Of a stretch of DNA of 64,000 nucleotides, positions 1-39,130 are shown piece after piece. The translations under genes and the position numbers were made by a program. The notes under the pieces were generated by a model. That model was not told the DNA's origin. It ran no database searches and saw only the letters and a list, made by a program, of their open reading frames with translations. This DNA comes from Kudoa neothunni. Its lineage: Eukaryota; Animalia; Cnidaria. The stretch covers positions 10,201,287 through 10,265,286 of the forward strand of contig OZ199839.1 of the NCBI GenBank assembly GCA_964304625.1, read 5' to 3'. Position 1 is the stretch's first letter; the number at the start of each line of letters is the position of its first letter.

Positions 1-1349
1 TGAACACGAGCTTCCACAATCACTACCTGAGCATCGCGCAGTAGTCCCTGTGTCAGGCCTGAGTTTATCAGCTGGGAAGAATTTTAATGCACAAGTTTGG
101 AATTTTACGTCACCTTGACCACCTGGATTATATAGGATTCGGTTAAGTGTTACACCGGTAATAGAATGTGCTGTTAAAAGAGAACTTGCGTTTGCATCCT
201 CCACAATAGCTAAAATTAATTAATATTTCTTTAGGACTGATAAAAATTTTACCAAATTTGCTCTCTTCATAACCATCAAAGGTAGTATCAGTCGTTATTA
301 GTTTATGATGCCTCGTTTGAATTAATATTTTCACGATTGGCTTAGTTTCAGAAAGTGCCAATTCCACATTATCACATGGTGCGTAACAATTTTTCCCAGC
401 TCCACCACCGCACGATGATGCATAAGTGGCTGTTTCATCACTGGCATTGTCTGCTGCATCTTTTATACTAAATAGACATATTTCTGATGGGAATGCATTC
501 AGGAATTTAAGCAAATAATTTTTCTTTTGAGTGTCGCCATGCTTATAGGCCACATAGTATTGAGGTTTATAAACGTCAATATTTTTTTTCATATAAGAAT
601 TTGGCATATTGTAGAAAAAACTTGGGTAGTTCGTGCATTTCATCTCATAATGAGGAATCATCGGATCAAAATCAACTGTATTTTCTTGATTATCGACTAC
701 ACACGTACCACCAGCGGTACCGGCTGCGTAGGTGACGCCCTTGTATAAAATTGGACATGGTACTTTAGGACATGTTTTAGTTGCAATCATTAACTTCTTG
801 TTTGAGTCCGTAGATATTGTAATTAATGGATTAATCAAGAGTGCTATTTATAATTTATTTTATGTAATTATTCAATTTAGCATACAAGTAGACAACCCAA
901 AAACGTCTCCGCCATTGTTTTTTTCTTTTATTGCACTAAATTGCTGACCAGAAAATACATAGATGTATTTTGTCCTTGGTGATAGTATATCGAACGTTAA
1001 CTTTATGTTGTTTCCAGAACAAGTACGAAGACACTTGTCATTTCCATGCTCATTATCACTATCATCACACGTATTAATCTGATCGAATTCAACAGCATCT
1101 TCCTTTTCTTTTCTTATTAGACATTTTTTTCCATTGGCATCATAGACCGATCCGGATAAAGTGAGATGTACTTTATCTCTATCTGCAATGCTATATGAGA
1201 GTTGTTTATCAGGTTTGGTAGACACATCTGGAGTTGCATGCACAGATTCCTTATTTATGACTACAAATGATTATAAATACAATGACAATTTTAATAAAAT
1301 TACAGGAAAATATAATCAAAACATTAAATAAGGAAATAGGAACCTTCAT
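1..1349 (-). CDS. Signal-peptide-bearing Cys-rich FN3-like repeat protein, paralog A (5' part; 3' end runs off the window)
   Basis: ATG at 1349 gives the signal peptide MKVPISLFNVLIIFSFINKESVHA. Phase-1 GT-AG introns at 1261-1303, 844-885 and 210-252 join ORFs 872-1243 and 143-838 into one frame that continues to the window edge (..QTCALKFFPADKLRPDTGTTARCSGSDCGSSCS). Collinear paralog of 5678-8635. Confidence 0.85.
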
Positions 1350-2230
1350 TGTTGTTGAATAAGAAATAAATCTGCTTATTTAACAAAGTATGAATAGACA
1401 ATATCAATTCATATTTGTAAAATAATATTCTCCTTAAACAAAATTATTAATTAATAAATGGAAACTATATATGATTATTACATTAACACTAGTTATATCA
1501 GTTTATACGAGTTTTGCCTCCATTGACTTTTACTAAACATTCTCTTTGTAATCAGATATAGGTAACGTTTTCATAAAAATATGATATCAATAGATATTAC
1601 TTTTTTTTTATTCTGAGTAAGTATTGTTTTTGTTAATTATTATGTAAAGAAAAATGATTTCAATACATCCTTCTATTTAAAATATTTCATTCGTTAATAC
1701 ATAATACTCATTTAATTTTTGACAAACTAAATAATAATATTTTCACGAGAATTAAATAATACAATTATCATTTTAATTTCTTCATTTATCCTAAATGTCA
1801 TTTGAATCAAGTATCAAAACATTTTTTAAAAATAATAGTATTTATTATTTTTTATACGGCGTAATTTATATAAATAAATACCAAGTTTCGAAAGAGTTAT
1901 TTCAATTATACTAGGTCGTAAATAAAAGGTGAATTCATGTGGATTGTAAAAAGTGTTTACAAAGATGTAATATCTTCAACACTTTAGCTAATGTCTACCG
2001 ACGGGGCTAGGATAAAAATTTTTGTCCTCCTTATATTCTGAACACCATTGAATACCAATTCCTTTTGTTAAACACACATTCATTATCTAAAATAAAATCA
2101 ATTGCTCTCATTTATCACAATTGAATCTAAAAATGACAACAACTATAAATATTAAATTTTTGATTCATCACTATTATAAAAATATTCAGTGGTATTAATA
2201 AAACTTTTTCGTAAAATTAACTTGTAGACA
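1350..2230. repeat. Duplicated upstream region of paralog A, homologous to ~8636-9362
   Basis: Shared blocks such as AATTCATATTTGTAAAATAATA, GATATAGGTAACG, GAATACCAATTCC and TTTTCGTAAAATTAACTTGTAGACA occur in the same order upstream of both paralogs. Confidence 0.8.
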
Positions 2231-3128
2231 TGGGATAGATTTAATCAGATCTCCCGTTTTGTTCCATCAGTGATAGAGTAACAATAGCAAGTTTTCCGTA
2301 AAATTCATCCATATTTGATGGAGTATGCTCCTAGTTTCTCTTGAAGGTATTTAAGAGCCAGCCTAATATTGATTAACATGTATACATAATGCTTTCATGT
2401 TTTTTATTCAAGTATAACTGTTTAAGTTGAATCTAAAATTGGACACACGAATAATTGTTCAATTGGAACAATATTCGGTTTATCTGAGGGAATGAATCAT
2501 ATGAGCTAAGGTTGATTTGTCCCGCTATAGAAGTTACGTAAGCTAATAAATCAAAAAAATAATAAAAAGAAACTTTGTTATTTTTTGGACTGGCGTTTAT
2601 TATAAACGGATTAACCACCTCTAAGCAAGAAAATTGTGCCACTATAAATTATCAAATTCGATAATCTATACAAAAATACGTAGAAAAAAGAGCCATTAAA
2701 TAGTTTATTTTATGTTTAGAAAATAAAATAAGTGTGGAATATATTATACCGCTTAATAATATACTTCAGAAAGTAATTGGAAAGTCAATTAAAGAGTGAA
2801 TCATTAACAGCACGTTAAGGTATGACAACGAAGGGTTTTGGAAACCTAAAAATTAATATCGGATACCATAATTTTAATAAAATTTTGATTGATATGTATT
2901 TATTTTTTGATAATACCAAAAATCGATTTGTCTTATTGGGCACCATACCCATGAAGCATTAAGAAATATAATTTTAACTAAAATTCAGTTTAGTTTAGTT
3001 TATTTTAATTTATTATTAAAGAATTTTAAATAAATCGTGTCTCCGACCTAGTACGTCAAATATATTTCCTTCGTAATAATCCTACCTGCGTAGAAATATT
3101 TTCTCCACCCCCGCATTATATTGTTTAA

Positions 3129-5067
3129 CCCTTTCGTTCCCAATTTTTTTTTGCTTGAAATTTTTTTCTGTTAAATTAATTATAAAATTATATACAATTT
3201 AAAATTTATGCTTTAAACAATAATTATTTAACAACAATTTGGTCTTTTTTAATCCGTTCACTAAGGTGGACGATGGGTATTTATTTACCTCGGCATATTC
3301 GCGCGTTGGTTACGCGCTAAAAAGGAACATACATAAATAAATTTTAATTTTAAAATATTTTTACAGATTGTTATGAAAGTTATAGAATCAATTCATTTCT
3401 TTCCTAAGACAAACCCTACACCTTGAATGTGTAGTCATCATTTGGGGGGAAATGTCCAACCACGTTCAGACAGACTTCATCACTCAATAGATTAGATCTC
3501 ATTCATTTTTTATTGGCGTTGAAGTAATTTTTCCCACCATCAGTTTGATTAAGCGAGGGTCTACCACGTTACGTTTGAGACGTCATCGATTGATGGTGGA
3601 TAAGATCTTCATTAACTTTTAAAGAAGAAATCCAACGAATCCATTGCTTCATTCTCATCGGTACGTCTCACGGAATAATTTCGTTTTTAACATAGCCAAT
3701 CGTTAACCATGCATGTATTTATAACCCAAAAGAATATTCTTAAGTATTACTTTCTGCATTTATGTTTCAGTACATAAAGTGACATGAGCATACCTGATAG
3801 GTCAACTCCACCCCTATTTTGGTTATATTCTTTAACAACAGTTGGACAAGGAATTTTTAGCATTTTTTTCTTAGACCTATTGAGACTGGTTCAATCGAGG
3901 AGTGAGTAGATGAAAGGATGACAACTGACCCATCAAACCGTCGTGTTATCGATATTCCATTGCCAGAGTCATATGCAGAATGATACGAGCCACGTCCTTC
4001 TTTTTTAAATTTTTGTCACTACTCAATGGACAACCCTTTTCCTTATCAATACGTATCGTATCAACATAATAGATATTTCCTCGTTTTAAGAAGATTTGGA
4101 GCGGGATAAATGTAAACCAGTTGTCAAAATATGTGAAATATAGTTCTCCCAACGGTCAACTTTAGAAACGATGCTCTAACTGAATCTAAAAAAGGTCTAA
4201 TCTTAGTGAATATATCGTATTTGGTCGAATTAAGATCCGTGATAATTTTAGAATTAACCGTGAAATGCAAGTATTTATATATTTGCTCAAAACAGTTCCT
4301 TGGGAATGTCTCGGAAACAAGGGGATAGTTCACAAGTTTCAACCAATAACATCCATACCTCGGCACTCTTACTATCCCCATAATAATCAAAACCCACAGA
4401 TATTTTTCTAACCTAAACATCAGTTTTGAAATAAGCATTTTGTTGAGTAGCTTACAGATTTGATTCATACGCAATTGGCAACATGAGGTCATGCAAGCTG
4501 CTAAAGATGGTCTTATTGATTTCTAAATTTTCAGCTAAACTTGGAACATTCTATTTCCTTCCTCATTTAAAATTTGATCGTCATCGGAATCACTAGAATT
4601 TGGATGTTTCATCACCTAATTCTGACTCATTTTGAATGATAGGACAATCCGACTCGTCTACTATCACATATGGTTCTGACTGATCCGCATCCGGAAATAC
4701 AATTACTTCTGTGATGGTTTTACCATTTTCTTTTTGACTTAAAAGAATATCATGGTCCACTATAGTATCCACGTGGAGATCTGTGTGATATTATTATATT
4801 TGAATCACAAATTAATTAAATTTCATTCATTAAATATCCACTACATTTTTCCAAATATTTTAGATTATTTCAGCGTTATAAAAAGGGAGGGTTGTATCGC
4901 AAATTAAAATTACCATATAGCATTTATTAATATATTATCTCATTAAATGTATAGCATGACAACTTATGTTTATCGTATTCACAAATTATTCTTTTAATAA
5001 TTTATGTGCTTATATACATAAGCGAATTAACTTTTGCCCACTAATGTGGACAATTGGAACAAAAAGG
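3129..5067 (-). mobile_element. Decayed piggyBac (PGBD3/PGBD2-like) DNA transposon
   Basis: TTAA at 3125-3128 and 5068-5071; imperfect TIRs CCCTTTCGTTCCCAATT / CCTTTTTGTTCCAATT. Broken transposase motifs RNCFEQIYKYLHF, KIRPFLD, YFDNWFT and CPTVVKEYNQNRGGVDLS, with stops and frameshifts. Confidence 0.9.
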
Positions 5068-5677
5068 TTAAATAAAAATACATTCTACTGTCGATTGATA
5101 GTATTTTGCGTTTCAATAATTTTAAACAGATTATTTTTTTCAATAAAAAAAACATTTTTTATGGTTTTTGTGATTGAGAGATTTTATAATTAAATTTAAA
5201 TTACAGTTTCGTTTATGCTAACTACAAATCATTTACGTAAATTTAATGGATATATGCTCTCTGTGACATTTTTAAATGATATATTTATTTGATAACTTTA
5301 ATACATAAACAGCAATTCTTTGATTGATGATTTTAAGTTTGCTAAAACAAGTTCAAATAAATGCATATATTTACTTAACTATCACTGTGTTAATATTTAA
5401 ATAGTATCCTTCAGTATAATGATAAGAGATTTATTATAATAACATAAAAATATTTTTCATATTTTGATATAAATCTTTGTAGGATTACATAAATATAATA
5501 TATAAGTGACAAATTTTAATAAAATATTTCATTTAATATAAAACAACTAATTTGTAAATATAATTTACCAAAATCTAAAAGTGGTTCAATTAACAGTCAA
5601 ATGTATCACAAATATTGATTTGATATATAAATAACATTGTTTTAATGAAATTAATAAACTCTTGATAAGGTCGATCC

Positions 5678-8635
5678 TTATGCTTGATTCTTCTTGTAAC
5701 CAAAGTATAATCCAACGATTACGACAACAATAACAATTGGTACCACAATTCCAATTATCCTAAATGGTAACTTATTCAAACTCGACCATATTTAGTGTTA
5801 ATACATGCTGGTGCTCGCCCTATAAATCAATGATAATAAATATTATTTTTACTCAATGTTACCTTGATTGATTGGAAGTCTCTCCTATATTTATGATTAA
5901 ATTAATTATTAATTATTGTTAAATACCTTGTTTTATTCGCCCAACACCTTTAACTGTAGGATATTTTGAGTGAATAACCGTTAAATGATAATCACTAGTA
6001 TCGTTTACGCCTTCAATTGTGAATGACTTGCATGTAGGTAGTTTACAACCACCAACTCCACTTGTAACACATTTTTTCACTATTGGTAAAGAAGGATCGT
6101 TCAAATTTCTCAACATCCATCGACACCTTGAATTTTCATTCTTTTCTTTTGGAAGCAATGATGTAATTTTTAAGGTGTCACCAACTCTTTCGATAATCAC
6201 TGTGATTTGTTTGTCCAATTCCGCAGGATTCTCAGGTGGGATGTCTATTTGTAGATGATGTATCAGAACTTTCTATAATTTGGTTGATAAATATTGTACT
6301 TTTGGGGATATCGATGGTAATTTCTTCCGATCTGTCTACAGCTGTAACCAACACTTGATATTCTTTTTCTGCTTCGTAACCCTCACCGATAATTATGCTA
6401 CTGCATAATGGTGGTTCACTACATGGTGGGAATTTAGAATGAGTAGTCACAATAGGAGTGGCTGATGCCGGAGTCGTCGTAGATGAACTTTGAGATGTAT
6501 CACCTCCGCTACTTGCTCTGGCCACTCTATTACTGTGATAATTAGTCTCACTGATCAACCGAGATTGTTTTGTTTCTGGATCATTGGTAGACTGGTCAAC
6601 ATTGACGGTAGGTGGGTTGGCCTGCGAAGGAGATGGGACAACAGTTGGGCAGGAATAAACTACATCTGAACTAATTCCATTTTTAACTTTGAGTTTATAG
6701 CTACAAACTGCTTCTGGATATGCGGTTGTTAATCTTCCAACAACCTGAAATCCTTTGTCTAGGAATTTATGGGATAGAGTGAGAGCCGATAAAGCTAATA
6801 TATGTAAATTAAATAAGGTTGCGGTATAATAATTTTACTAGTTGAAACATTCTCAAATATTTTTTCACCATAATCTTTATTTGAAACAACTTTAATATCA
6901 TAATTTGTTTTTGGGTGTAAATTTATCAGTTTCTGAGTATCCTTGCAAAATCCTCTGCATGGGTTACTATCTTCACATTCTGCTTCTTCATACATGTGTT
7001 TACCTGTTTTACTGATGTAATATGAACATGTTGGTTGGGTAGTTGTTGTTTCCACTGGTCCATCGACTGCCTTGATTATTGCAGTTACGTCATTTGTCGT
7101 AGGTGTTGTAGAGACAAAGTCAGATCCTGTATTTTTAACTAAAGAAATTAAGAAATGTAAACCATGTAATGAATTACTTGTTCTGAAAAATAAATATTCT
7201 TTGATGGTTTCGTAATTGGTTATAGTTCCTGCCGTTATTTCTATTATATATGATTTTCCTGATTCAAGGCCACTAATAGCGGTGTTTTCTGAGCATTGAT
7301 TTTCACAATTTGAATTTGAACATTGTGTAGTAATTCCATCACTCGTTCTTAGTTTATCAGCTGGAAAGAATTTTAATGCACAAGTTTGGAATTTTACGAC
7401 ATCCTGACCATTTGGATTATATAGGATTCGGTTAAGTGTTACTCCGTTAATAGCATATGTTGTTAAAAGTGTGCTTGCACTTGTTTCCTCAACAATTGCT
7501 ATAATTAGCGATAATTATAGTGCATTTACTACAAATCATACCGAATTTGCGATCTTCATAACCTTCAAACTCATTATTTATTGCCTCTATTTTATGATGC
7601 CTAGTTTGAATTAATATTTTCACGATTGCCTTAGTTTCAGAAAGTGCCAATACCACATTATCGCATGGTGCGTAACAATATTTCCCAGTTTCACCGCCAC
7701 ACGATGATGCATAGTTAGCGGTACTTCCGGTAGTAGTGCTGGCGGCGTCCTTTATATGGAATAGGCATATTTCCGACGGAAATGCATTCTGAAATTTAAG
7801 GAGATATTTAGTCTTTGTAGTATCACCTTCCTTATATGTCACATAATATTGGGGTTTATAAACGTCAATATTTTTTTTCATATAAGAATTTGGCATATTG
7901 TAGAAAAAACTTGGGTAGTTCGTGCATTTCATCTCATAATGAGGAATCATCGGATCAAAATCAACTGTATTTCTTGATTATCGACTACACACGTACCACC
8001 AGTGGTACCGGCTGCGTAGGTGACGCCCTTGTATAAAATTGGACATGGTACTTTAGGACATGTTTTAGTTGCAATCATTAACTTCTTGTTTGAGTCCGTA
8101 GATATTGTAATTAATGGATTAATCAAGAGTGCTATTTATAATTTATTTTATGTAATTATTCAATTTAGCATACAAGTAGACAGTCCAAACACGTCTCCAC
8201 CAGTATTCTTATTTTCTATTGTGTTTTTATCATTCCAGAAAATATATAGATGTACTTTGTTCTCGGAGATAGGATATTAAATTCCAATTTAATATCATCT
8301 CCAGAGCATGGGCGGAGGCATTTGCCAGTTTGACCAGTGGCTTCATTGTTGGGACAAGAAGTTATTTGCTCTATATCGGTGCCATCTTCTTTTCCTTTTC
8401 TTATTAGACATTTTTCCCCTCGGATGCATAGACCTTCCCATATAAAGTGAGATGTACTTTATTTTTATCTGCTATGCTATATGAGAGTTGTTTATCGGGT
8501 GTAGTAGACGCCTCTGGAGCTGCATGCACAGAATCCTTATTTATGACTACAAACGATTAAAAATACATTAATAATTCTATTATAATTACTAAAAAATGTA
8601 ATCAGAACATTAAATAAAACGAAGGGGACCCTCAT
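5678..8635 (-). CDS. Type I membrane protein with ~7 four-cysteine FN3-like modules, paralog B (~854 aa; three 1-nt homopolymer frameshifts in this sequence)
   Basis: ATG 8635 (MRVPFVLFNVLITFFIINKDSVHA). Introns 8547-8589, 8132-8173, 7499-7541, 7139-7177, 6795-6838, 6245-6299, 5885-5926, 5820-5862, 5760-5804. FN3-like strands ISGLESGKSYIIEITA, LINLHPKTNYDIKVVS, IEGVNDTSDYHLTVIH. TM segment MIIGIVVPIVIVVVIVGLYFGY, tail KKNQA-stop at 5678. Confidence 0.85.
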
Positions 8636-10977: not shown

Positions 10978-11301
10978 TTCCAAAGTTTGATAGTTTCTTA
11001 TATATTATTATTATTATTATAAACAGTTATATTCTCTGTGTAAATTGTAGTACTATTTAAGTCGGTATTGTTTATGGTCTCTAGAGAATAGTTTTGTTGG
11101 TGTTCATTTTTTGTCGCAATTTTAGTTATTGTTTCTATAGTGTGATGGGTAGTGTTTTGAGAGGAATAGAATGCGCAATAGATTGATTTTGTCGGAATTT
11201 TCTGTTTAAACCCCACACATCATCAAAATCTCCTAGCATACATATTCAATATTTTGCTTTGAAAATTACTTCTGGTGGTTAGGCTGAACTCAAGTTGTTT
11301 G

Positions 11302-11598
11302 ATGAGACGCCTACAAAACGTCACCAACAAGGTACTTAAAAGTAGACAATCAGCCAGAGAATGCCGAGCTCGTAAAAAAGTTAGGCATCAAAAATTGGAG
11401 GAGAAAATCATCATCCAAGAAACTAAAAACACTGAACTTTATAAAAAAATTGCAAATAGTACATTTTCTTATATAAATATTCTTAATATATTGATTTATT
11501 CGTAGATATTCAATATTTGCACATATTTGGATAGCGGAGGCACAATCACTCAAGACCAAATATCCACAATAAAAAGTATCAGCTACAACATTAACTAG
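11302..11598 (+). CDS. CREBL2: CREBL2/REPTOR-BP-like small bZIP protein (start uncertain)
   Basis: KSRQSARECRARKKVRHQKLEE matches the CREBL2 basic region (RSRQSARECRARKKLRYQYLEE). After intron ~11459-11505, IFNICTYLDSG parallels YKQWCMAMDQG; joining the exons needs one A removed from the A7 run at 11443-11449. Confidence 0.82.
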
Positions 11599-17090: not shown

Positions 17091-20000
17091 CTATACATAT
17101 AATTCGGTGTCGACGTAGCGATCAACAATCGGTTTGATGGCATCCCAACGTCTATATTTCATGGATTCGGATTTTAAACAGGAAACAAATCGTTTGACAT
17201 TATAAGAGTTGTAATTTTCTTTAACGAGTTTTTCGATTGATTTAATATCTAAATTTTAGTCGTGATTTACAAAGAGATAACATCAAATAAAAACTTACTC
17301 ATATTATGCATTCGAATAAGGTTAATGAATTTTTTGATGGTTGTAAAAAAGGTTTTACCACACACAAATTTTGGAGGACTTGATCTGTGTGGGATATCCA
17401 CTGTTGACGAATCACTATCGACTGATTCATAAGAATACACATTGAAAGGATCATCGACAATTTGAACGTCATTATCTTCGTCATCGTTGACGAATTCGGA
17501 GGGAGGAGGCAAGGTAGATTCAGAAATGGGTTCAACTGAGTGACTGCTTGGTGAGGTAGCAGTGTCGATGTCATCCAACGAATCCAAATAACTTTGGGAG
17601 AGTGATCTCCGTATACGACCAACCCGTTGGGATAGGAATCGACGACGACGATTTTTATATTCTCGTTGTTTTCTAGCTTGTGAGGTTTCTTTGTATTTTT
17701 CGGGAATAGGCGAATCGGAGCTATCGGTAGTTTCGTCAACTTTAACGTCCTTAACAAAAGATGCAGTTAATTCAAATCAACCAACTACAGATTCTATCAA
17801 CACACATATTCCATTTGTCGAGTTTTAAAGGGATTGCCAAACGAATTTGTTCTTATTTGTGTAGGATCAATAGGACGTAGATTGTTGGCATCGTTTCTAT
17901 GATAATTTCCCATCGAATCAATGCTAACGTTGTGATAGGTTTCTAATCGCACATAATCATAACGTGAGAATTAATATTTTCATCAGTGTAAAAAGATTAC
18001 CATACCTTTGAACTGTGGTTTGATTTTATTGATAGAACTTTTGCAGATATTGTCATAGAGTTGGGGTAACATGGCCAATAAGCGATCTCGATGAATATTG
18101 AATGGGTTTGTGAACGGATTGAGATAGTCGTTTTTATCAGGTTTTTGACCATATTGAGATATATTTAGTTGAATGTCATTAAAAGGCGGACTACAACCAA
18201 CGCAATTAAATACACTCCGAATCAATCTGCAACAACTCTTACAATAGAAAGTGCTCCAAATCAACTTTATCAAATCTAGGCATAGATTGTTTGAACAGGA
18301 GTGTTCGAAAGTCGGGTTGTTCTTCAATTTTCACTGGCGGTATGCTATTCGACCACATAAATTTACATTGTTCATGTATGTGATATTAAAATATACTTAA
18401 ATTCCACTTTATCATAATCCATAATCACATCAAAGTTGGTGATCAAATCGCTCAAACTGCCACTTGAAGTGGTTATATTTAACGAGTCATACACCTTTTT
18501 TGCCTTAAATAAAGCACCCATTTAATATTTTACAAACAAATTTGGCCGAAGAAAAATACCATAGGTTTTCCATTTCGAAGGAATTGATCAACTCTTCGAT
18601 TGTACTGCATCTCAGCGATATCCTGAACGTATTGTGAGACTGATATACCGACTTTTTTTAATGCGGTTCTAATCGACTAATATGTACATATGTCAGTCGA
18701 AATTATTAAAAAAACTGCGAATTTGTGTTGGTATTCAACTTACATGAATGTAATAATAGGGCACAGATCGAATATAGGCAATAAATTTTTCGCGCCAATT
18801 TTTACTAATTCTACCCCTTGTCGAAACCCATTCATTCACCAGTGGAATCAATGTGAGATAGTTGTACGGACATACGTACAAATTGATGTAACCTTCCTTC
18901 TTGTCCAATGCAATATAACCAAAACTTTCTCCAATGGTGTTGACATTTTCGCCGGAATTTAAGATATAACACTAAACGAGGACATGTGTCACTTTATCTA
19001 CTCTAACAAACACATGTTGACGAATCAATTATACTGGCAAACAATTGAGTGAATTTTCCACATTATCTATTATGTAATCGGGAAACTGAATGGTATCCAA
19101 GTGATATTTGTCGATAGGAAGGTCGTTACAGATTGGAGTTAAAATTGCCGTCTCCGATACAACAATCACTGGGATACTGTCTCGACGAGGCTAAACACGC
19201 GAATATTATCGTTGCGCCGAAATCATTTTTTTAATGAAAAATTACAAACGGTTCTTGAGGATTTAGTGCTGGTGTATAAAACTCCTCGGGAATTGGATAG
19301 AGGTTGCTGTTCAACGACCCCACAGGCACCATCAAATCAGCTTTTATACCCTGTTTCTCGTCATCCAAACTATACTCTCTTAACACTCAATTAGAATTTA
19401 TTATTCCAAGTAAATTAATAAAAAATGAATGCGGCTATTCTCACGTATTTAATATTCGAGGATGATTAATTATTTTAAAGAAGATATATACGTATACATT
19501 CGTCATACAAATGAAATCTTTAATCCCTACACCCCCAACCAAATGCTAGGATAATGTTGAACTTTCATCACATGATGTATGTTATATCATAGTTAATTAT
19601 TATTAACACAAATATGAACGTCTAGGGTCCAATAAAACGGATTACAATAATAATTACACACGGTTATCGCATTTTTTACTAGCCAACAAAAATTTTTTAT
19701 TTTATGTGACTGTGTGAATTTAACTAATTCAAATGGAAGAATGGCTTTCAAGAATGCTCAATTAGGGAGCTGATAATAATTCAATTAATATTAAATTTTT
19801 AATGAGTACATACTCTCTGAAATAATCCAAGGTAGATATAGCATCTAAATAACATATGCATTAGATATCAGATTGGGTGATAGAAAAGAATAAAAATTAC
19901 TGAATCTCGTTAAATTGTTGCCCAACTTTGCAGTGAGAAGATCGCACGACGACAATCTCACAAACCATACTGGTATGATGGTTTCTTGTTGATTGCACGG

Positions 20001-20895
20001 AGCTTTTAAAGTGAAACCAACACTGGACAGTGTTGTCTCGTTGTAAACAGGAACCCATTGACCGTTGGTTTCCATAGCCATATTGAAGAAATAATTTTCT
20101 CCTAGAGGAGAATTTTCATTTTTATAGTTGGTGATTTGAGCTTCACGATAAAGCACACCAGCCGGTGCGATATCAATAACATAAAATCGTTGATCCCATC
20201 GGAAAGGTTGATGATAAAAAGAAGGCTGTTCAGCTATATCGATAAACAGCTGTTTCAAATGAGAATAATTTTCATTATCCCCATTGTTGACGCCAACACT
20301 GAGACTGTCTTCTAACATATCACACGATATGAGAAGAATTATGGTGGGTTCGTTGAAAAATGGAAATCGTCCCTAAATTTATCCACATTAATTAGATTAT
20401 GATAAAACGACTAGTCTCCCTCCATTAAAGTACCATTGAAACACTATCGATTCCAGTGGATAGCCGATACAAGTCAATAAATGTGTACACATCCAAAACC
20501 GTCTTCTTCAAATCACGATATCCACAAGGCTGTATATATTTCAACTTACGATTCAATTCAACAATTGAGTCTGTTTGTGTTGAAAGCAATGTAAAAGCTC
20601 GGTCAGGTGAAGCAAATTCGGTTGTAAAAAGATGAATCTTTTCACGATAATACTTACCATCAGGTTCAACAGGACGGGTCTATCAAATTTTTGAAAAATT
20701 AAAATTATTTTTCATTTCAATTATGTGTTAAATTTGTTGTAACAAAAAACACATTAATCAACCTTTTTAGATTGAATGTTTAAGTACTTTAAGAAAATTT
20801 TCAATACACGCCTTCGCTATATCCATATAACTCAAACCCATGTACGATCGCTGACACATCTTAAAACTTGTGTCCAATATTAATGTGACATGCAT
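17091..20895 (-). CDS. INTS6: Integrator complex subunit 6 (multi-exon)
   Basis: N-terminal VWA MHVTLILDTSFKMCQRSYMGLSYMDIAK; GRFPFFNEPTIILLI; QPFRWDQRFY; YPIPEEFY; LPIDKYHLD; FGYI..INLYVCPYNYLTLIPLV..WREKFIAYIRSVPYYY; FTNPFNIHRDRLL; C-terminal helical domain ending ..DRYVDTELYV-stop. Confidence 0.92.
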
Positions 20896-21109: not shown

Positions 21110-21644
21110 TTATAGACTAAGTCTGAGTTTGATCACATCAAAGGAAGAAATAAATAAGTTTGAAAGATTTATATACTTGAAAAATATATAAGAATGATTA
21201 TTTGTTCTATTCATCTAATTTGTAGCTTTAATACAATTTATAGTAAAATCACTTATATAATTGAAGTTATGGATAATACTTTTATTTTGTGCTTTATATA
21301 TTTAATATATTTTTTACATGAAAATATATAAATTATTTACATTAAAAAGACTAAAAATTCAATTTGCATAAATATAATTTTTCCCGCTGAGTTGAAAGCA
21401 GTAATTTAATTTTAGCTTATTAAATAAATAAATAAATAAATTTTAGCCGTATAACAAACATATCACCATGAAATCTCACAATGAATTATTATATTTACTT
21501 GAATAGATTTGTTTATTTAAAGGAATTTTTAAAATTATTTGTCAATGAAATAATATTATAAAGTGAAATTCATGCTATACAAGTGGTAAATAAGATGACA
21601 TCAAAATAGGAGAGAGAAAATTTGAGCTTAATGTGGTTTGTGAC

Positions 21645-22138
21645 AAACGTAAGGATTTCTAAGTAATTATATTATTCAAGGCTATTAAATTCAATAAGAA
21701 GTTGGCCGAAATGTTTAAAATGTTTTTTAGAATAAATATTTAACAACTATTTATAAAACTATGATCAGTCTCTTCCTTTCGCGCCACATCTGTCTTTCAG
21801 AGAAGTAGCTTAATAATAATAATAATAATAAATAATATTCAGATGTCAGCTTTTTTGTCCATTTCGAATTATTTCTGGTATCTATGAGCGTAGAAATGGG
21901 TTGAAAATAATTAAATTAAGCAGAGTCTACAAAATTAAACCTGTACACAACTTATGGGTAAGAGTTGATGAGTTTAAAAATTGTCATTACGTAAACGACA
22001 TAACTTTTAGAATTAGAATTTACCCTGCAAGTAGAGGTAGCCTTTGCTATAGCTAATCCAAAATAAAACCTTGAAGTAAATATGAATCTGGCTTCTAGGT
22101 TAAGGGGGTAAATTTGAATAAACAATTGACAACCTATG
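21645..22138 (+). repeat. Dispersed repeat (probable hAT-derived non-autonomous element), copy 1; homologous to 38560-39130
   Basis: Shared blocks GGATTTCTAAG, GCTATTAAA, AAGAAG, TTTAACAACT, TTTATAAAAC and the end TGGCTTC..GTTAAGGGGGTAAATTTGAA.AAACA. Confidence 0.75.
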
Positions 22139-24358: not shown

Positions 24359-26331
24359 CTAACGGATAAGGTTTAATGGAGTAGTTTTCGAAAAGATATC
24401 GTTCATATTTCTAGTTTGAGCACTTTTAGGTATAGCAAAACATTTCCAAAGTCGTAGGGTTTCATCCGCGCCGATCGACGCAATAGTTGAACCATCCGGA
24501 TTCGGCACAATACTAAGGATTCGTTGGGTGTGCCCAGTCAAATGACATAATGGAGTCATTGAAGGATAACTCCAAATAGTGAGGCGATTGTGTGGATAGC
24601 CGTGAGCGGAAACAAATTCATTATAATAACTACTCCACACGATTCCAGTCACTTGAGAATGGGTTTCAACACTGGCCAAGTGTTGTCCATTTCCCACATT
24701 GCATAGATTGATACGGCCGCACGAAGTACCTCCACCAGTGGCCAGCAGATTAGCTACTCTAGGGTGCCAAGCAACGGCCTAAAACCCAACCTATTATTAA
24801 CTCAACACACACAACACCATACTTTAACAGCAGCAGTGTGGTCGGAAAAGGTGTGCAGGGGATCTGCACCCGACATGGCTTGATTCATATTCCACACATT
24901 GACAAGGTTGTCATTGCCGCCGGACGCCAAATGTCTACCATCCGGAGACCACACTAGAGAACACACCTCTTGTTTGTGTTGGTTATCGATTCGATTGATA
25001 ATACAGTTAGCTATTCGGACATCTATATTTACAATTTGTCCACTTAGACTGCCACTAATACGAAAAGTCAACACAATTCAAACGCTATTATGTGTAACAG
25101 ATTTTGATTACGTGGATAAAATATGACGATTCCAAGAAAGTGAACCAATTCGACTACTGTGAGCTTTGATTTTGCGTATACATTTCTGAGTACGAGTATC
25201 CCACAGTTGAACATATCCGGCCGCTCTACCAACGGCCAAACAACTGCTACTTTCATTGCCAGACCACCGCATGGAACACACATGATCAACAGTGTTTGGA
25301 TTGGCTAAAGAGGGGAGTGGATTAGAGTCTTGTGTTTCGAGTTGTGTTATATGTCCAGTGGTGGCATTCCACAAGTAGGGAACACCTTCCAAACCGACGC
25401 TGATTTGATTATTTCCACCCCAATCAAGCACATTATAATAGAAATTATCAACGAGATCGGGAGCGTCTAGTGTTCTCTCAGCAGTTTTGGGTATAAAACG
25501 TCTTCTGGACCAACTTGGTTTTATACCACCTTTCAGATCGTCCTTTGATTGGAACTTTACGGTGGATGTTGTTCCGGCTTTAATATAGTAATGAATTCAA
25601 ACTATGGAAATCGTACAATTCGGTTACCTTCACTGCTGGTTGGCAAATCATTTTCGTATGAAAGCACCACATTACTCATTTCTTCGGTGAGCAGATACTC
25701 ACGAATGATTTGTTGTCTTTCATCCAACACAGCATCTACATTCGAATGCACGATACTTTTGCTGGTAATATTGTCATCGTAGGAGTAGAACAGTTTCTCT
25801 CTAATAGCTGCAATATCGCCCTTTATCCTAGGAAGGTAACGGTCTCTGACAGGTGTTTCCCGCTTCGATTTATGGTCGACTAAAACAGAGCATTTACTCA
25901 TTGTCTGTAATTTGGCGAGTGACCTAAAAACCTACTTTGCATAAAACATGATTTATCATTTTTGGATTTGTCGGTCTTTTTTGTCAATTTCGAACTTGAT
26001 TGACTTGAAGTGTTGTGAAATGATGCAGACCGACATAATGGCGAGCCGACTGTGGCTTTGATTTGTTTGTCTTTGATTGAAGGTATCTTGAAGCTGCTTT
26101 CCAATGTTGGTGTGATGAAATTCAGTAATGGTGATCTTGATGTGGCATTATGCTCACCATAAGAATTGTCAGGATTGCGGGATTTTTCAGTTGATAGTAC
26201 ACAAGTAGAATTTCTAGTGTTGGATTTTTTTGAACCTAGAAATCATATCAATTTAAACTAACTCAAAAATCGTTACTTTTTTTCTTTTCCCCTTGATGGG
26301 TAATAGTAGTTTTGTTGTTCTTTTCAACCAT
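24359..26331 (-). CDS. CDC20: APC/C co-activator Cdc20/Fizzy (start codon tentative)
   Basis: C-box DRYLPR, KILR-like RIVRF, RFIPKTAERTLDAPDLVDNFYYNVLDWG, WD40 repeats (HKQEVCSLVWSPDGRHLASGGNDNLVNVW, HTAAVKAVAWHP, DETLRLW) and C-terminal IR tail. Confidence 0.92.
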
Positions 26332-27978: not shown

Positions 27979-30267
27979 CAGTGGTTTTAAATTGGGGATC
28001 CGCTGCAGGGATACATATGAAAAATTTTGTAAATTTTAATTTGTTAAAAAAACTAAATGATGGTAGCTGTGCTTCAAGAATCTGAGTTCGTTTCGTGTTT
28101 TTTTCCTTTAAAAATTGGCTGCACAGCAAGTATTTTGTGATACCAGGGGTCGTGTTGTTCTGTCTCAATTGAAACGACAGAAAGTGAATGACCCATGCTT
28201 GCTTTCACTTATGAACAATATCCAAAATGTTATCGTTTCTGATTCAACGTTTTAACATGGAAACAAAAATTATCAAAATATTTATGTTGATGTTATTCAA
28301 TGCAACTTGAAATGTAGTTCCCAGTAAGTTTAACAATGTTCCAACTTCGACAATGAGACAGAATTAAAGTTACTCAGTGTCATAGCGGCGCGTCGTTAAT
28401 CTGCACAAACATGGTTTCATCACCCAATAATACCACAGATTACTTTTAATATACTAGAAAATGCGAAGCAGTTGGAAATACACATTTTACAATTTTTTTA
28501 TTATCTGCCCACAGATGGATTCAGATGAAGGCCTGCAACAGATTATTACAAAAGCTTTCGAGTTTACTGTTACTGGCGATAAAAATTGTCCATCTCCATT
28601 ATGCTTAATTTATGGCGAAACATTATCAAATAGTTCAATGGTACCGTCAAAGTTGAAACATTCTACTTTGCCAAAAAAATAAGGAATACTTTCAAAGATT
28701 AGAAGAATAAACTTCAAAAAGATCTTCATCATTGGTAAGCAATGTCACAATTGGCGAGAAAACGAGCTTTGCTGTAGCAGAGATCATAGCTAAGCAGGTG
28801 AAACCACATACAATTATACAATTATACAATTGCTCAATCGTTATTGTTACCAGCATGTGTTGGAATTACGAAAAGATTTTTTGGAGAAATTGCTGCTAAT
28901 GGTCTCAAAAACATACCCCTTTCTTACAATAAAATAAGCAGACGGATTTCAGATATGTCACTTGATATCGAAAAGAGTGTGATATTAAAACTGAAACTTG
29001 CCGAATTTTTCGCTATTCAAGTGGGAAATCACAGTTACTTGCTTTTATTCGATTCATTGAAAACGATGCTATTGTCGATGAATTTTTATGTTGCAAAGAG
29101 TTGCCACAAACAACAAAAGGACAAGACATATACGATACTTTCACGTCATACTTAAATCAGTGGGACTTGACACAGGAAAAGTGTATTGGAATATGCACAG
29201 ATGGATGTCCACTAATGACTGCATGTGTAGAAGGTTTTGTTACACTTGTGAAACAATCTCAACCAAACATTACGTTAACTCACTGCTTTCTTCATCGCGA
29301 AGCACCTGTTGCCAAAGAGATTGGTCCTGAGCTAAAGGATGTACTTGATATGGTGGTCAGCATAGTCAACTACATAAAATCAAGACCAGTAAAATGTCGG
29401 CAGTTCAGAAAACTTTGTGAAAGTACGAATGCTGAGCATGTCACCCTGTTACTTCATATTGAAGTCCGATGGCTCTCTCGAGGACGGGTATTGTCTCGGT
29501 TTTATGAACTCAGAGAATTGTTGAATTCTTTTAAAAAAGACAAGGTCGAATTTATCCGACATCTTCCAACATTTGAATATGTTAAAAGTATGCAGGGAAC
29601 AAAAGAAAATATTTTGTCTTCAGTGGATAAAATTAACGCTTTCAAACAGGTGCTGGCTATCTGGAAAAACACGTTTCGAAAGGGAATTATGATGAAATTA
29701 TCCCTCTGATAGTTAATCATTTGGAATCCTTGATTCAAAGATTAGATAAATATTTTCCATCTATATCCCCTGAAGAGTGTGACTGGGTTAGAAATCCATT
29801 CGTCGTACCCTTGAACGCGACTTTCAATTAAAAGGTGGAAGAGGAGTCGTAAAATGGAGCACAGTTCACTTTATCTTGATTCATTACGGATTTTAATTTC
29901 ACAAGAACACCCATTAGTTTCAAATAGAGCGTTGTGTCTATTTCCACAATTTTCAACATCATACCTACGTGAATTAGGTTTCTCGGCCATAGCTAATATT
30001 ACAAATAAGAAAAGAGAAACCCCACTCTACTAACCCTCGGAGAAGAAATGCGTCTGTCTCTAGAACCCGTCCAAATATTGTAGCTGTAATACGAAGTCAC
30101 CAACCACAAATATCACGTTAGTTTTTATTTGTTTTGAATACAAAACAAACTGAAAATATTTGTTATTTTTTTGGTGAGTGCGCATGCAAATTTTACAACT
30201 TGTATTCTCTTCATTTGGTTTTAATCACTTTGGGGTTCCACGGTTCCAAAAAGATTAAAAACCACCG
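27979..30267 (+). mobile_element. Decayed hAT Buster/Charlie transposon (ZBED8/SCAND3/FAM200-like transposase pseudogene)
   Basis: PLCLIYGETLSNSSMVPSKLKH, IPLSYNKISRRISDMS, GICTDG, THCFLHRE, IVNYIKSRP, LLLHIEVRWLSRGRVLSRFYELR, with multiple frameshifts. Ends CAGTGGTTTTAAA / TTAAAAACCACCG; no TSD preserved. Confidence 0.92.
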
Positions 30268-33158: not shown

Positions 33159-35055
33159 GGTAATGGTAAAGTATGTGACTCCAGAAAAACACCATCTTGC
33201 GAAGGTTTTTTCTCGTTTTTTCTTTTACGATTATCAATAATAAATCAAAAGAATACCGAGCGCAAATATTGAGCTAAAATTAATTACTTCTAAATTTTTG
33301 CCTAATTCCTATTCGACAATAGTCGGATACATGTGTAATCTACATCGTTTTGCAATAAACACCGGGAAATAGCTTATTATTTGCATATTTCATCCTGATT
33401 AGTACATTAATTTCATTATTTATATTTTTTAAGTTTATCTAATATTAAGAAATAATGTGTCATCTATCTTTATTTCTAAATGTCAAATTAACTTTTAAAA
33501 CATTTAGTCACATCTATAATTGTTTATTTTAGTTTATAAATTTTTATTTGTACATTGTTATTAGTGAACAAAATTTTATACACCAATTACTCGCGAAATT
33601 CAAACTGACAATATTTATATTAATCGTATATTGATATTTTTGGCTACAAAATCTAAGAGAGACGTTAATAAAAAATATTTCAATATGTATTTAGTTTATT
33701 TAAAAATATTTAATTATGCAAATTTTAGAAATAATAAATCGTGCATTTTTTATCCCTTTATTTAATACGACCTAAAGTAGTATATTAATTTACACTACTA
33801 ATTTATTTTATTAACCAATATTTTCTCCCAATTTTAAGATTCCCGTGAATGGAACTATCAAATGTATTCATTTAAAATAAATTCAAACTAACCTGATTTA
33901 TTTTTACTCGAAAAATTTATCATTTATATACCTAACTTCCAATATAAAATTTCTAATTATACGTCCTCTGAAATTTATTACATTCAATACAACAAATAAA
34001 AATGCATTTATATAAAATGTGATAGACTTATTAATAACTACATTAGTATAGTAACGTAATTTTTGTTAGTATATTATTTAAAAGTTGAAATTTTTCTCCC
34101 ACAATTGATCGAAACCATTCTTCGCACAAATATTCGGGAAACTTTGTTTAAAGTCTCCCCCAACAAGCTTCTGTGGTGTTTGTATGGGCACCGTCTCTGA
34201 CATGTTCAATTGAATGATTGATTTTTATATGCTTCCTCTTTCCGTGAAGAACAGTCTTGTCAATTTCGATGACGTAATCTTCTTCACCAAATTTTTGTCG
34301 CTCCTCAAATCTTAATACGCATATTTTTCTAATCTTGGGAAACCATGAAGAAGTGGTAGGTTTGGAAATATTTATCATCTAACCGGTCGACATAATGGTA
34401 TTGTCCACCGACCAGTTATAAAGTATTCTAAATATTTTTTTTATCGTTGATTTTGTTGTTGAGGTAACGGAACCCATAGAGAAAAAGGTACCATTTCGAG
34501 GGGAAACACTAGTTTTACACCTTAATTACATTAAGTCGTTATTTCACAAAAGATAAGTACTTTTTTCAGTTGTAAGTGAAAGAATAATCAATGTTGTTTC
34601 TATTGTAACACGAAGTATCGGCCATTGGTCTCCTTACATTTATTTTTCTCTTTTTTAATGTAAAGGTTTTATAATTCCAACACTTAAAACACCTTTCTGA
34701 GGCAGCTTTTTGATAGCCCTTTACTACTAAGGTGTAAAAAAACTATCATGGTCATTAATTAAACGGAAAAAGTCATCGTCCCCTCTAAAACTTAAAAGCT
34801 CCATTATAGCGGTTTTCACGTGATAAATAAATAAATAATAAGCTATTTTCCGGTGTTTATTGCAAAACGATGTAGATTACACATGTATCTGACTGTTGTC
34901 GAATAGGAATTAGGCAAAAATTTAGAAGTAATTAATTTTAGCTCAATATTTGCGCTCGGTATTCTTTTGATTTATTATTGATAATCGTAAAAGAAAAACG
35001 AGAAAAAACCTTCGCAAGATGGTGTTTTTCTGGAGTCACATACTTTACCCTTACC
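33159..35055 (-). mobile_element. Merlin (IS1016/ISXO2-like) DNA transposon, internally decayed
   Basis: ~220-bp near-identical TIRs starting GGTAA(T/G)GGTAAAGTATGTGACTCCAG; perfect 8-bp TSD AAAATCCC (33151-33158 and 35056-35063); transposase remnants VIEIDKT and INHSIEHVRDGAHTNTTEACWGRL. Confidence 0.93.
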
Positions 35056-38559: not shown

Positions 38560-39130
38560 CAGGGATTCTCATCCAGGAGTACGTTTTAAATTACAGGGGG
38601 TAAATTAAATGACCTCAAAATTGGATTGGGGAAATTTTTGCACGATAGGGTTTATGAAATGTTTATGGATTTCTAAGCAATTATAATACTCATTGCTATT
38701 AAACTCATTAAGAAGCTAGCAGAAATTTCAGAAATGTCTTTAGAAATTAGTGTTTAACAACTGTTTATAAAACGATGGTCAGACTCTTTCTGTTATGGCT
38801 CGTTTATCTTTTAGTGGCGTTACTTAATACCTGTATTTGAGTGGGAAATAATATTTAGATGTCACTAATTTTGAATATTTTTAATTATTTTTAGACTCAA
38901 ATGTGAAGGAATGGGCCAAAAATCATTTTTTAGCGAAATCTAATAAGTTAATCCGTAGACAACTTGTGAGTAGGGGTTTCTGGGATTATAGATTCATGTT
39001 GTGCAGACGTACATATCGTTTAGAATTAAAATTTACCGTGCCAATAGTCTCTGCCTCAGCAAACCAATGTAAAACCATAAAGAAAGCGTGACCTTGGCTT
39101 CCAAGTTAAGGGGGTAAATTTGAAAAAACA
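38560..39130 (+). repeat. Dispersed repeat (probable hAT-derived), copy 2; homologous to 21645-22138
   Basis: Begins CAGGGATTCTCA (hAT-like terminus) and shares collinear blocks with copy 1. Confidence 0.72.

What the first reader, a model, noticed from the sequence alone, without database searches (positions are those of the whole stretch)
1..8635. Tandem family of type I surface proteins built from an unfamiliar 4-Cys FN3-like module
Seen: spliced paralog B is signal peptide + ~7 modules of ~100 aa + TM + a 5-aa tail (KKNQA). Most modules share C-x(16-22)-C-x(4-11)-C-x(3-5)-C followed by an FN3 E-F-strand-like motif (ILSPRTKY, GLESGKSYIIEITA, NLHPKTNYDIKVVS, GYEAEKEYQVLVTA, GVNDTSDYHLTVI). 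The first seven introns are all phase 1 and fall at module boundaries, except that one exon carries two modules. Established: canonical FN3 domains usually lack this four-Cys pattern, symmetric phase-1 exons mark shuffled extracellular modules, and FN3 surface antigens occur in parasites (taeniid EG95/45W family). Inference: a lineage-specific, probably non-signalling adhesin or surface-antigen family in a tandem array that may extend left of the window.
Basis: partly seen in the sequence, partly recalled or inferred. Interest (0 to 1): 0.8.

Follow-up and report, generated by a model that had tools for sequence, protein, structure and literature searches.

The report
Myxozoan FN3-like surface protein array
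These are neighbouring copies of a gene for a membrane-anchored surface protein of seven fibronectin-III-like modules, part of a family of at least 150 (probably a few hundred) genes in what is very probably the tuna muscle parasite Kudoa neothunni; I found the family described in no paper, and its function is untested.

Summary
Largely confirmed. Gene B (8635-5678, minus strand) has 10 exons, seven phase-1 introns, a signal peptide, seven modules, a transmembrane helix and a 5-residue tail. Module 5 folds as FN3 (pLDDT 85; the 50 best structural matches are nearly all FN3 domains).

B carries three one-base gaps, which other runs of the same sample indicate are assembly errors. Paralog A is cut off by a scaffold gap at position 1. 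The family is genome-wide (at least 150 copies; 270-470 candidates), not a local array.

Relatives with the same module order (26-54% identity) occur only in five unnamed sequencing samples. Paralogs are under purifying selection (dN/dS 0.2-0.4) and are patchworks of each other: membrane-proximal exons are homogenised, modules 1 and 4 stay diverse. Module 6 carries a Ser/Thr/Pro insert with one invariant Arg, a candidate cleavage site.

Best reading: a diversified, non-signalling surface adhesin or coat. Antigenic variation is not shown, and no RNA data were available. The scan has noted this family many times elsewhere in this genome.

The parts
5678..8635 (-). Paralog B, whole gene: 10 exons, about 854 aa if the three one-base gaps are assembly errors
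   Evidence: paralog splice conservation; reads
8590..8635 (-). B exon 1, signal-peptide exon (15 codons + 1 nt)
   Evidence: equivalent hydrophobic exon in 28 of 29 paralogs
8174..8546 (-). B exon 2, module 1 (C-17-C-11-C-3-C); two one-base gaps near 8415-8419 and 8232-8234
7542..8131 (-). B exon 3, module 2 (C-4-C-17-C-21-C) plus module 3 (C-21-C-7-C-3-C); one one-base gap near 7969-7972
7178..7498 (-). B exon 4, module 4 (C-19-C-4-C-3-C); with module 1 the most variable module
6839..7138 (-). B exon 5, module 5 (C-16-C-5-C-3-C); FN3 fold predicted with confidence
6300..6794 (-). B exon 6, module 6 with a 75-aa Ser/Thr/Pro-rich insert (about 6424-6648) between Cys2 and Cys3
6517..6519 (-). 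Invariant Arg of the module-6 insert (motif x-[VI]-A-R-small), candidate processing site
   Evidence: 28 of 28 paralogs, the only invariant column of 78 in the insert
5927..6244 (-). B exon 7, module 7 (C-17-C-7-C-4-C), membrane-proximal and most conserved
5805..5884 (-). B micro-exons 8 (5884-5863) and 9 (5819-5805), short stalk
   Evidence: GT-AG and frame only; region conserved at DNA level in 33 copies
5678..5759 (-). B exon 10: transmembrane helix, 5-aa tail KKNQA, stop
1..1349 (-). Paralog A, exons 1-3 and part of exon 4 (1349-1304, 1260-886, 843-253, 209-1), open frames, cut off by a 200-N scaffold gap left of the window
564..894 (-). Gene-conversion tract in A, near-identical (intron 2 included) to B 7853-8182
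7853..8182 (-). Partner of the conversion tract in B
3124..5080 (-). Decayed piggyBac-like element between A and B (not part of the gene family)
   Evidence: PF13843 E 2.8e-10; copies at 70-81% identity genome-wide; TTAA-CCC end at 3125

Best explanation
The genes encode type I membrane proteins of a myxozoan (very probably Kudoa neothunni): a chain of seven beta-sandwich modules, at least one of them shown to be FN3-fold, each braced by two disulfides near the loop-bearing pole (inferred pairing Cys1-Cys4 and Cys2-Cys3). The 5-residue tail carries no signalling motif, so they most likely work as a surface coat or adhesin that contacts host cells or host molecules through the variable loops of the outer modules (1 and 4). 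The repertoire grows by tandem duplication and dispersal and is reshuffled by segmental gene conversion, which homogenises the membrane-proximal stalk while the outer modules stay diverse. A protease probably cuts at the invariant Arg in the module-6 insert, leaving the two chains disulfide-linked. Shown: gene structure, topology, module-5 fold, copy number, purifying selection, mosaicism. Inferred: disulfide pairing, cleavage, surface location, ligand, any immune role.
For: Gene model and conserved splice sites. TM exon with short tail in about 100 copies. FN3 fold of module 5 (PDB profile hits titin E 1.5e-7 and fibronectin 6.6e-7). At least 150 scored copies, 148 of 150 module-5 matches free of stops. 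dN/dS 0.22-0.42 per exon. Within arrays dS is 0.02-0.10 in exons 6-7 against 0.32-0.63 in module 4 and 0.38-0.45 in module 1. Nearest neighbour switches along the gene; B and its left neighbour are 99% identical over exons 8-10 with introns. Cys2 and Cys3 are lost together in one paralog module and one distant relative. Invariant Arg.
Against: No expression, localisation or binding data; no RNA run holds the stretch. No exon shows dN/dS above 1, so diversifying selection is not shown. Only the closest subfamily (30 loci) could be read. Only one module has a confident model; the module 2+3 model has pLDDT 59 and generic Ig-like matches. A strict furin R-x-x-R occurs in only 13 of 28 copies, and relatives from other samples lack the insert.
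Confidence: 0.5

Rival explanations
1. Structural coat or matrix protein (plasmodium glycocalyx, spore valve or capsule wall). Many copies serve dosage, and loop diversity is drift plus gene conversion.
For: dN/dS below 1 in every exon; variable patches fall in loops; mucin-like insert; no signalling tail.
Against: A dosage role predicts homogenisation of the whole gene, yet modules 1 and 4 keep high dS and dN within arrays whose stalk exons are nearly identical, and deep subfamilies persist.
Confidence: 0.2
2. Parasite self/non-self or cell-cell recognition code working by homophilic binding, in the manner of Hydractinia Alr or chelicerate sDscam.
For: Cnidarian host lineage; clustered single-pass genes with one domain per exon, as for Alr (PMC9546547); variable outer modules; A and its left neighbour may be alleles differing by a 100-nt patch at 56-62% identity.
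Against: No V-set or I-set domain detected; the FN3 signature kept is the opposite of that in the Alr spacer; no tail for ITAM or ITIM; genes spread over all three chromosomes.
Confidence: 0.12
3. Programmed antigenic variation: one or few genes are expressed at a time, and switching draws on the repertoire.
For: Very large repertoire, mosaic genes, constant stalk with variable outer modules; variant surface families are proposed for another myxozoan (bioRxiv 10.64898/2026.02.11.705288).
Against: Nearly all copies are intact genes with their own signal exon; the breaks in B look like assembly errors, not a silent archive; no shared upstream element beyond a short proximal stretch.
Confidence: 0.1
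4. B is a true pseudogene, or the family is largely non-functional repeat carried by transposons.
For: Three one-base gaps in B as assembled; transposon remnants nearby.
Against: Contigs of other runs carry an extra base at all three sites, and the contigs of the run that matches the assembly break exactly there; parasite k-mer coverage was about 7 (PMC12239612); purifying selection and intact frames family-wide.
Confidence: 0.08

Closest known systems
Fibronectin type III domain superfamily (PF00041; contactin, NCAM, titin, sDscam FN3)
   Same: Module 5 model superposes over its whole length (Z up to 9.3, rmsd 2.4-3.7 A; atlas TM 0.70); Leu-x5-Tyr E-F motif in 29 of 29 module-5 and 27 of 29 module-4 sequences; phase-1 single-exon modules.
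   Different: Below Pfam cut-off (best 19 bits against 25; 12 of 29 members at E up to 0.1); no Trp at all in modules 1-5; four conserved Cys around strands C, C' and E; 7-18% identity to the structural matches.
Taeniid EG95/45W oncosphere antigens
   Same: FN3-based, multigene surface antigens of an animal parasite, signal peptide on its own exon.
   Different: EG95 has one FN3 domain, a GPI anchor and seven family members (PMC2671473); here seven modules, a TM helix with a short tail, four-Cys modules and at least 150 genes; different phylum; no sequence link found.
Hydractinia Alr allorecognition family
   Same: Cnidarian, clustered, single-pass proteins with one domain per exon and a disulfide-bearing Fn3-like domain (PMC9546547).
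   Different: [quoted passage not shown]
Sphaerospora molnari VSP-like and RIFIN/STEVOR-like families
   Same: Expanded, Cys-containing single-pass proteins of a myxozoan proposed for immune evasion.
   Different: VSPs are defined by CXC/CXXC-rich ectodomains with over 10% Cys; this family has four Cys per about 100 aa in beta-sandwich modules; those families have 18-27 genes.
Insulin receptor FnIII-2 insert domain and furin-cleaved receptor PTPs (from my own knowledge)
   Same: An unstructured insert with a basic cleavage site inside the second-to-last FN3 domain of the ectodomain.
   Different: No homology evidence; no L domains, kinase or phosphatase; the site here is monobasic in about half the copies; cleavage untested.

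Membership tests
FN3 superfamily | Seven-stranded beta-sandwich of FN3 topology | tested here: met
   Module 5: pLDDT 85; VIA top 50 nearly all FN3 domains, Z 9.3-7.9; Foldseek top hits NCAM, sDscam, BOC/CDO FN3 at E 5e-3 to 8e-3.
FN3 superfamily | Same fold in all other modules | tested here: inconclusive
   Modules 2+3: pLDDT 59, generic Ig-like matches Z up to 7.4. Modules 1, 4, 6, 7 not folded. Profile-profile between modules below 3% probability, though the Cys columns of modules 4-7 align.
FN3 superfamily | Leu in the E-F loop and tyrosine corner in strand F | tested here: met
   L73 and Y79 invariant in module 5; motif in 27-29 of 28-29 sequences for modules 4-6, fewer for 1, 3, 7.
FN3 superfamily | Conserved Trp in strand B | tested here: not met
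   No Trp in exons 2-5 of any of 29 paralogs.
Pfam fn3 (PF00041) | Score at the gathering threshold | tested here: not met
   19 bits against 25; best E 0.0045 among 29 members.
EG95/45W | One or few FN3 domains with GPI anchor, taeniid origin | tested here: not met
   Seven modules, TM helix followed by a basic tail; EG95 features from PMC2671473.
Hydractinia Alr | V-set/I-set domains plus Fn3-like spacer that keeps Trp and lacks the Tyr corner | tested here: not met
   Reverse signature; no named cnidarian protein among the relatives.
Hydractinia Alr | Allele-specific homophilic binding | not testable with these tools
   Needs cell aggregation assays.
Conserved FN3 receptors (RPTP, cytokine receptor, RTK) | Cytoplasmic catalytic or signalling domain and full-length homology | tested here: not met
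   5-aa tail; no hit to any named receptor.
Antigenic-variation systems (VSG, var, VSP) | Mutually exclusive expression and switching | not testable with these tools
   No RNA run holds the stretch.
Antigenic-variation systems (VSG, var, VSP) | Diversifying selection on exposed regions | tested here: inconclusive
   Exon-level dN/dS 0.22-0.42; only two 10-codon windows slightly above 1 (N-terminal linker, module-6 insert); no site model run, and conversion confounds it.

The most novel reading that the evidence does not exclude
Kudoa and related fish myxozoans carry an old, several-hundred-gene repertoire of proteolytically processed, disulfide-braced FN3 surface proteins that is diversified by gene conversion and expressed selectively by cell or stage: a variant-surface or recognition system in an animal parasite, built from an animal domain and probably hidden from annotation by repeat masking.
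Probability: 0.2. Interest if true: 0.85.

Novelty: new variant of a known kind. Interest (0 to 1): 0.55.

Why it matters
K. neothunni has only 5,316 predicted proteins (PMC12239612), so a family of at least 150, and probably 270 or more, intact genes is roughly 3-5% or more of its coding repertoire, expanded in a lineage known for gene loss. The genome paper does not mention fibronectin domains, and it annotated a repeat-masked genome without RNA data, so the family may be missing from the annotation (inference). It gives concrete candidates for how Kudoa contacts fish tissue or avoids immunity, and for diagnostics: the homogenised stalk modules are shared across paralogs. The fold and the evolutionary mechanism are both known kinds, and function is untested, which caps the score.

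Tried and rejected
Word-index protein searches with exon 3 and with a pooled module alignment found nothing; the atlas had no usable hit for exon 3. A weak match of module 5 to the NMDA-receptor ligand-binding segment (Pfam E 7e-4, PDB E 0.03) was rejected as chance: 36 residues, and the fold is FN3. Profile-profile comparison could not prove homology between modules. Paper searches for myxozoan FN3 families and for the accessions of the relatives were blank; the sample label RIIS20 suggests a codfish gut study (PMC7054092), but I could not confirm the accession. No shared promoter element was found across clades.
Full report
Organism. The window is G000:C2:10201287-10265286 of a 40.26 Mb assembly in four contigs, about 30% GC, with introns of 39-55 nt. 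Earlier scan notes suggested Kudoa neothunni. The published assembly of that tuna myxozoan is 40.2 Mb with three chromosomes plus a mitochondrial circle, GC 30.41% and intron length 49 bp (PMC12239612). The match is by genome statistics, not by a marker gene, so the name is very probable but not proven here.

Observation. Gene B runs from 8635 to 5678 on the minus strand in 10 exons. In the 29 closest paralogs the acceptors of exons 2-7 and donors of exons 2-6 lie at homologous phase-1 positions in 28-29 cases each, and 28 have an equivalent signal exon. Module 6 has the same four Cys with a 59-75 residue insert between the second and third. Module 2 differs (4-17-21). The last exon encodes a hydrophobic helix and KKNQA; similar exons occur in about 100 copies. 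The two micro-exons rest on splice signals and frame alone.

First, B has three one-base gaps relative to A, near 8415-8419, 8232-8234 and 7969-7972, so the assembled exon 2 ends in a stop. Four runs of the source sample were laid on B. Contigs of X1, which otherwise match the assembly, break at exactly these three places. An X2 contig spanning 8385-8561 matches B with no substitution and one extra base at the first site; X3 shows an extra base at the second; X2, X3 and X4 at the third (which lies in a tract shared with A, so that one is less specific). Parasite k-mer coverage was about seven. I read the gaps as assembly errors; the evidence is contigs from one sample. Second, A is cut in exon 4 by a 200-N scaffold gap directly left of position 1. 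Beyond the gap begins a copy, A', 91% identical to A over 1.14 kb but only 56-62% over about 100 nt in module 1. A and A' may be two haplotypes of one locus or recent duplicates. Further copies follow at C2:10.192-10.196 and 10.186-10.188 Mb. A decayed piggyBac-like element lies between A and B.

Family size. Exon 3, module 5, module 6 and module 7 each fill the 150-candidate scoring cap, with 471, 334, 282 and 272 candidates, on all three chromosomes. Of 150 module-5 matches, 148 have no internal stop. B belongs to a subfamily of about 35 copies that form location-specific clades.

Fold. Module 5, predicted with a pooled alignment whose Cys columns line up across modules 4-7, has mean pLDDT 85 and pTM 0.77. 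The 50 best VIA matches are nearly all FN3 domains over residues 1-99 (Z 9.3-7.9). Foldseek gives NCAM, sDscam and BOC/CDO FN3 domains at E 5e-3 to 8e-3, the atlas TM 0.70, and the language-model search fn3 clusters at 0.91-0.92. The pooled profile hits titin and fibronectin at E 1.5e-7 and 6.6e-7. Modules 2+3 gave a weaker model (pLDDT 59) with generic Ig-like matches. The modules keep the Leu-x5-Tyr motif but modules 1-5 have no Trp, and they stay below Pfam's cut-off. From the strand assignment, Cys1 opens strand C, Cys2 ends C', and Cys3 and Cys4 lie in the C'-E connection, all near one pole. Cys2 and Cys3 are lost together in module 4 of one paralog and of one distant relative, suggesting 1-4 and 2-3 pairing. 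In module 2, two Cys are kept in most relatives and the other two are usually lost together.

Relatives. Word searches found none. Because the claim rests on absence of relatives, I ran the full HMMER scan: 15 hits among 1.84 billion proteins. The ten I looked up are unnamed singletons, and the ten loci fetched come from five samples, with GC 19-39%. Identity to A's exon 3 is 26-54%. Their contigs show the same order, module 1, 2+3, 4, 5, 6, on matching reading-frame blocks; one sample holds several very divergent copies. A SNF5 fragment beside one of them is only 44% identical to this genome's SNF5, so that organism is a distant relative. I infer other fish myxozoans, but could not name them. 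No named protein was hit, so the family is restricted but older than this species.

Evolution. Among close paralogs dN/dS is 0.22-0.42 in every exon, so these are functional coding genes and positive selection is not shown. Within three separate arrays, dS is 0.02-0.10 in exons 6-7 but 0.32-0.63 in module 4 and 0.38-0.45 in module 1. Locally, A and B are 82% identical overall yet share a tract of about 330 nt with one mismatch, intron included; the nearest neighbour switches along the gene among A, A', B and the next copy; B and A' are 99% identical over exons 8-10 with their introns. This is segmental gene conversion with a homogenised stalk. Whether the outer modules are kept diverse by selection or merely convert less often cannot be told from these data.

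Module-6 insert. It is 46% Ser/Thr/Pro in B and poorly conserved, yet one Arg is invariant in 28 of 28 copies, the only invariant column of 78, in the context x-[VI]-A-R-small. In distant genomic paralogs most C-terminal half-matches of the module-6 profile start at positions 72-91, just before this motif at 93-96, which hints that it is widespread; I could not read those sequences. A convertase-like cut here would leave two chains linked by the inferred disulfides, as in the insulin receptor's FnIII-2 insert (own knowledge). Only 13 of 28 copies have R-x-x-R, the copies are related, and two relatives from other samples lack the insert, so this is a lead.

How it works. Most likely (0.5) a non-signalling surface coat or adhesin with variable outer modules; rivals are a structural coat (0.2), a parasite recognition code (0.12), programmed antigenic variation (0.1) and non-function (0.08). 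It works like other expanded parasite surface families but is not a member of EG95/45W, Alr or the VSP-like families reported for Sphaerospora. I found no paper describing it, and the genome paper has no mention of fibronectin; the library lacks most subscription journals.

Limits. No RNA evidence. Searches and folds were done exon by exon; the joined protein was left out. The scan's earlier notes describe the same family at many other loci; they were leads, not support. Verdict: real, new variant of a known kind, interest 0.55.

Noticed in passing
L001:1156-1355 (directly left of window position 1): 200-N scaffold gap; A (right) and A' (left) overlap by 1.14 kb at 91% identity with a 56-62% patch in module 1, so they may be two haplotypes of one gene joined as a false duplication. 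A' also shows one-base slips near the contig end.
   Followed up: partly
window 3124-5080: Decayed piggyBac-like element with an internal deletion near 4160; copies at 70-81% identity across the genome. A second dispersed repeat lies at about 2300-3100.
   Followed up: partly
window 33159-35055: 1.9 kb element bounded by 232-nt inverted repeats at 97% identity, apparently non-coding (MITE-like or deleted DNA transposon).
   Followed up: no
window 29101-29709: ORF that looks by eye like a hAT/Buster (ZBED5-type) transposase fragment; no Pfam hit at E 0.01.
   Followed up: no
window 11275-11505, 24359-24697, 50967-53488: Ordinary genes: a bZIP factor, CDC20/Fizzy and a P4-type phospholipid ATPase.
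   Followed up: partly
window 21578-22124 and 38592-39130: Direct repeat of about 550 nt at 70% identity, not examined.
   Followed up: no
window 19845-20318 and 58833-59834: Two long ORFs (157 aa; 333 aa acidic and coiled-coil-like) without a significant Pfam match.
   Followed up: no
L040:350-5609 and G000:C3:1355653-1361303: A family gene lies within about 3-5 kb of SNF5 both in the distant relative's contig and in this genome, but on opposite sides; possible old synteny or chance given the copy number.
   Followed up: partly
window 6860-6965 (module 5): A 36-residue stretch resembles the NMDA-receptor GluN2 ligand-binding segment (E 0.03 in PDB; 26 of 29 paralogs hit PF10613 below cut-off); judged chance.
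   Followed up: yes
window 5549-6740: Contigs of runs X2 and X4 differ from the assembly at about 1-2% of sites in B's 3' half; a second haplotype or the near-identical 3' end of A'.
   Followed up: partly
L036, L038: Two very divergent relatives from different samples group together (100/99 support, long branches), hinting that some subfamilies predate the species split.
   Followed up: partly
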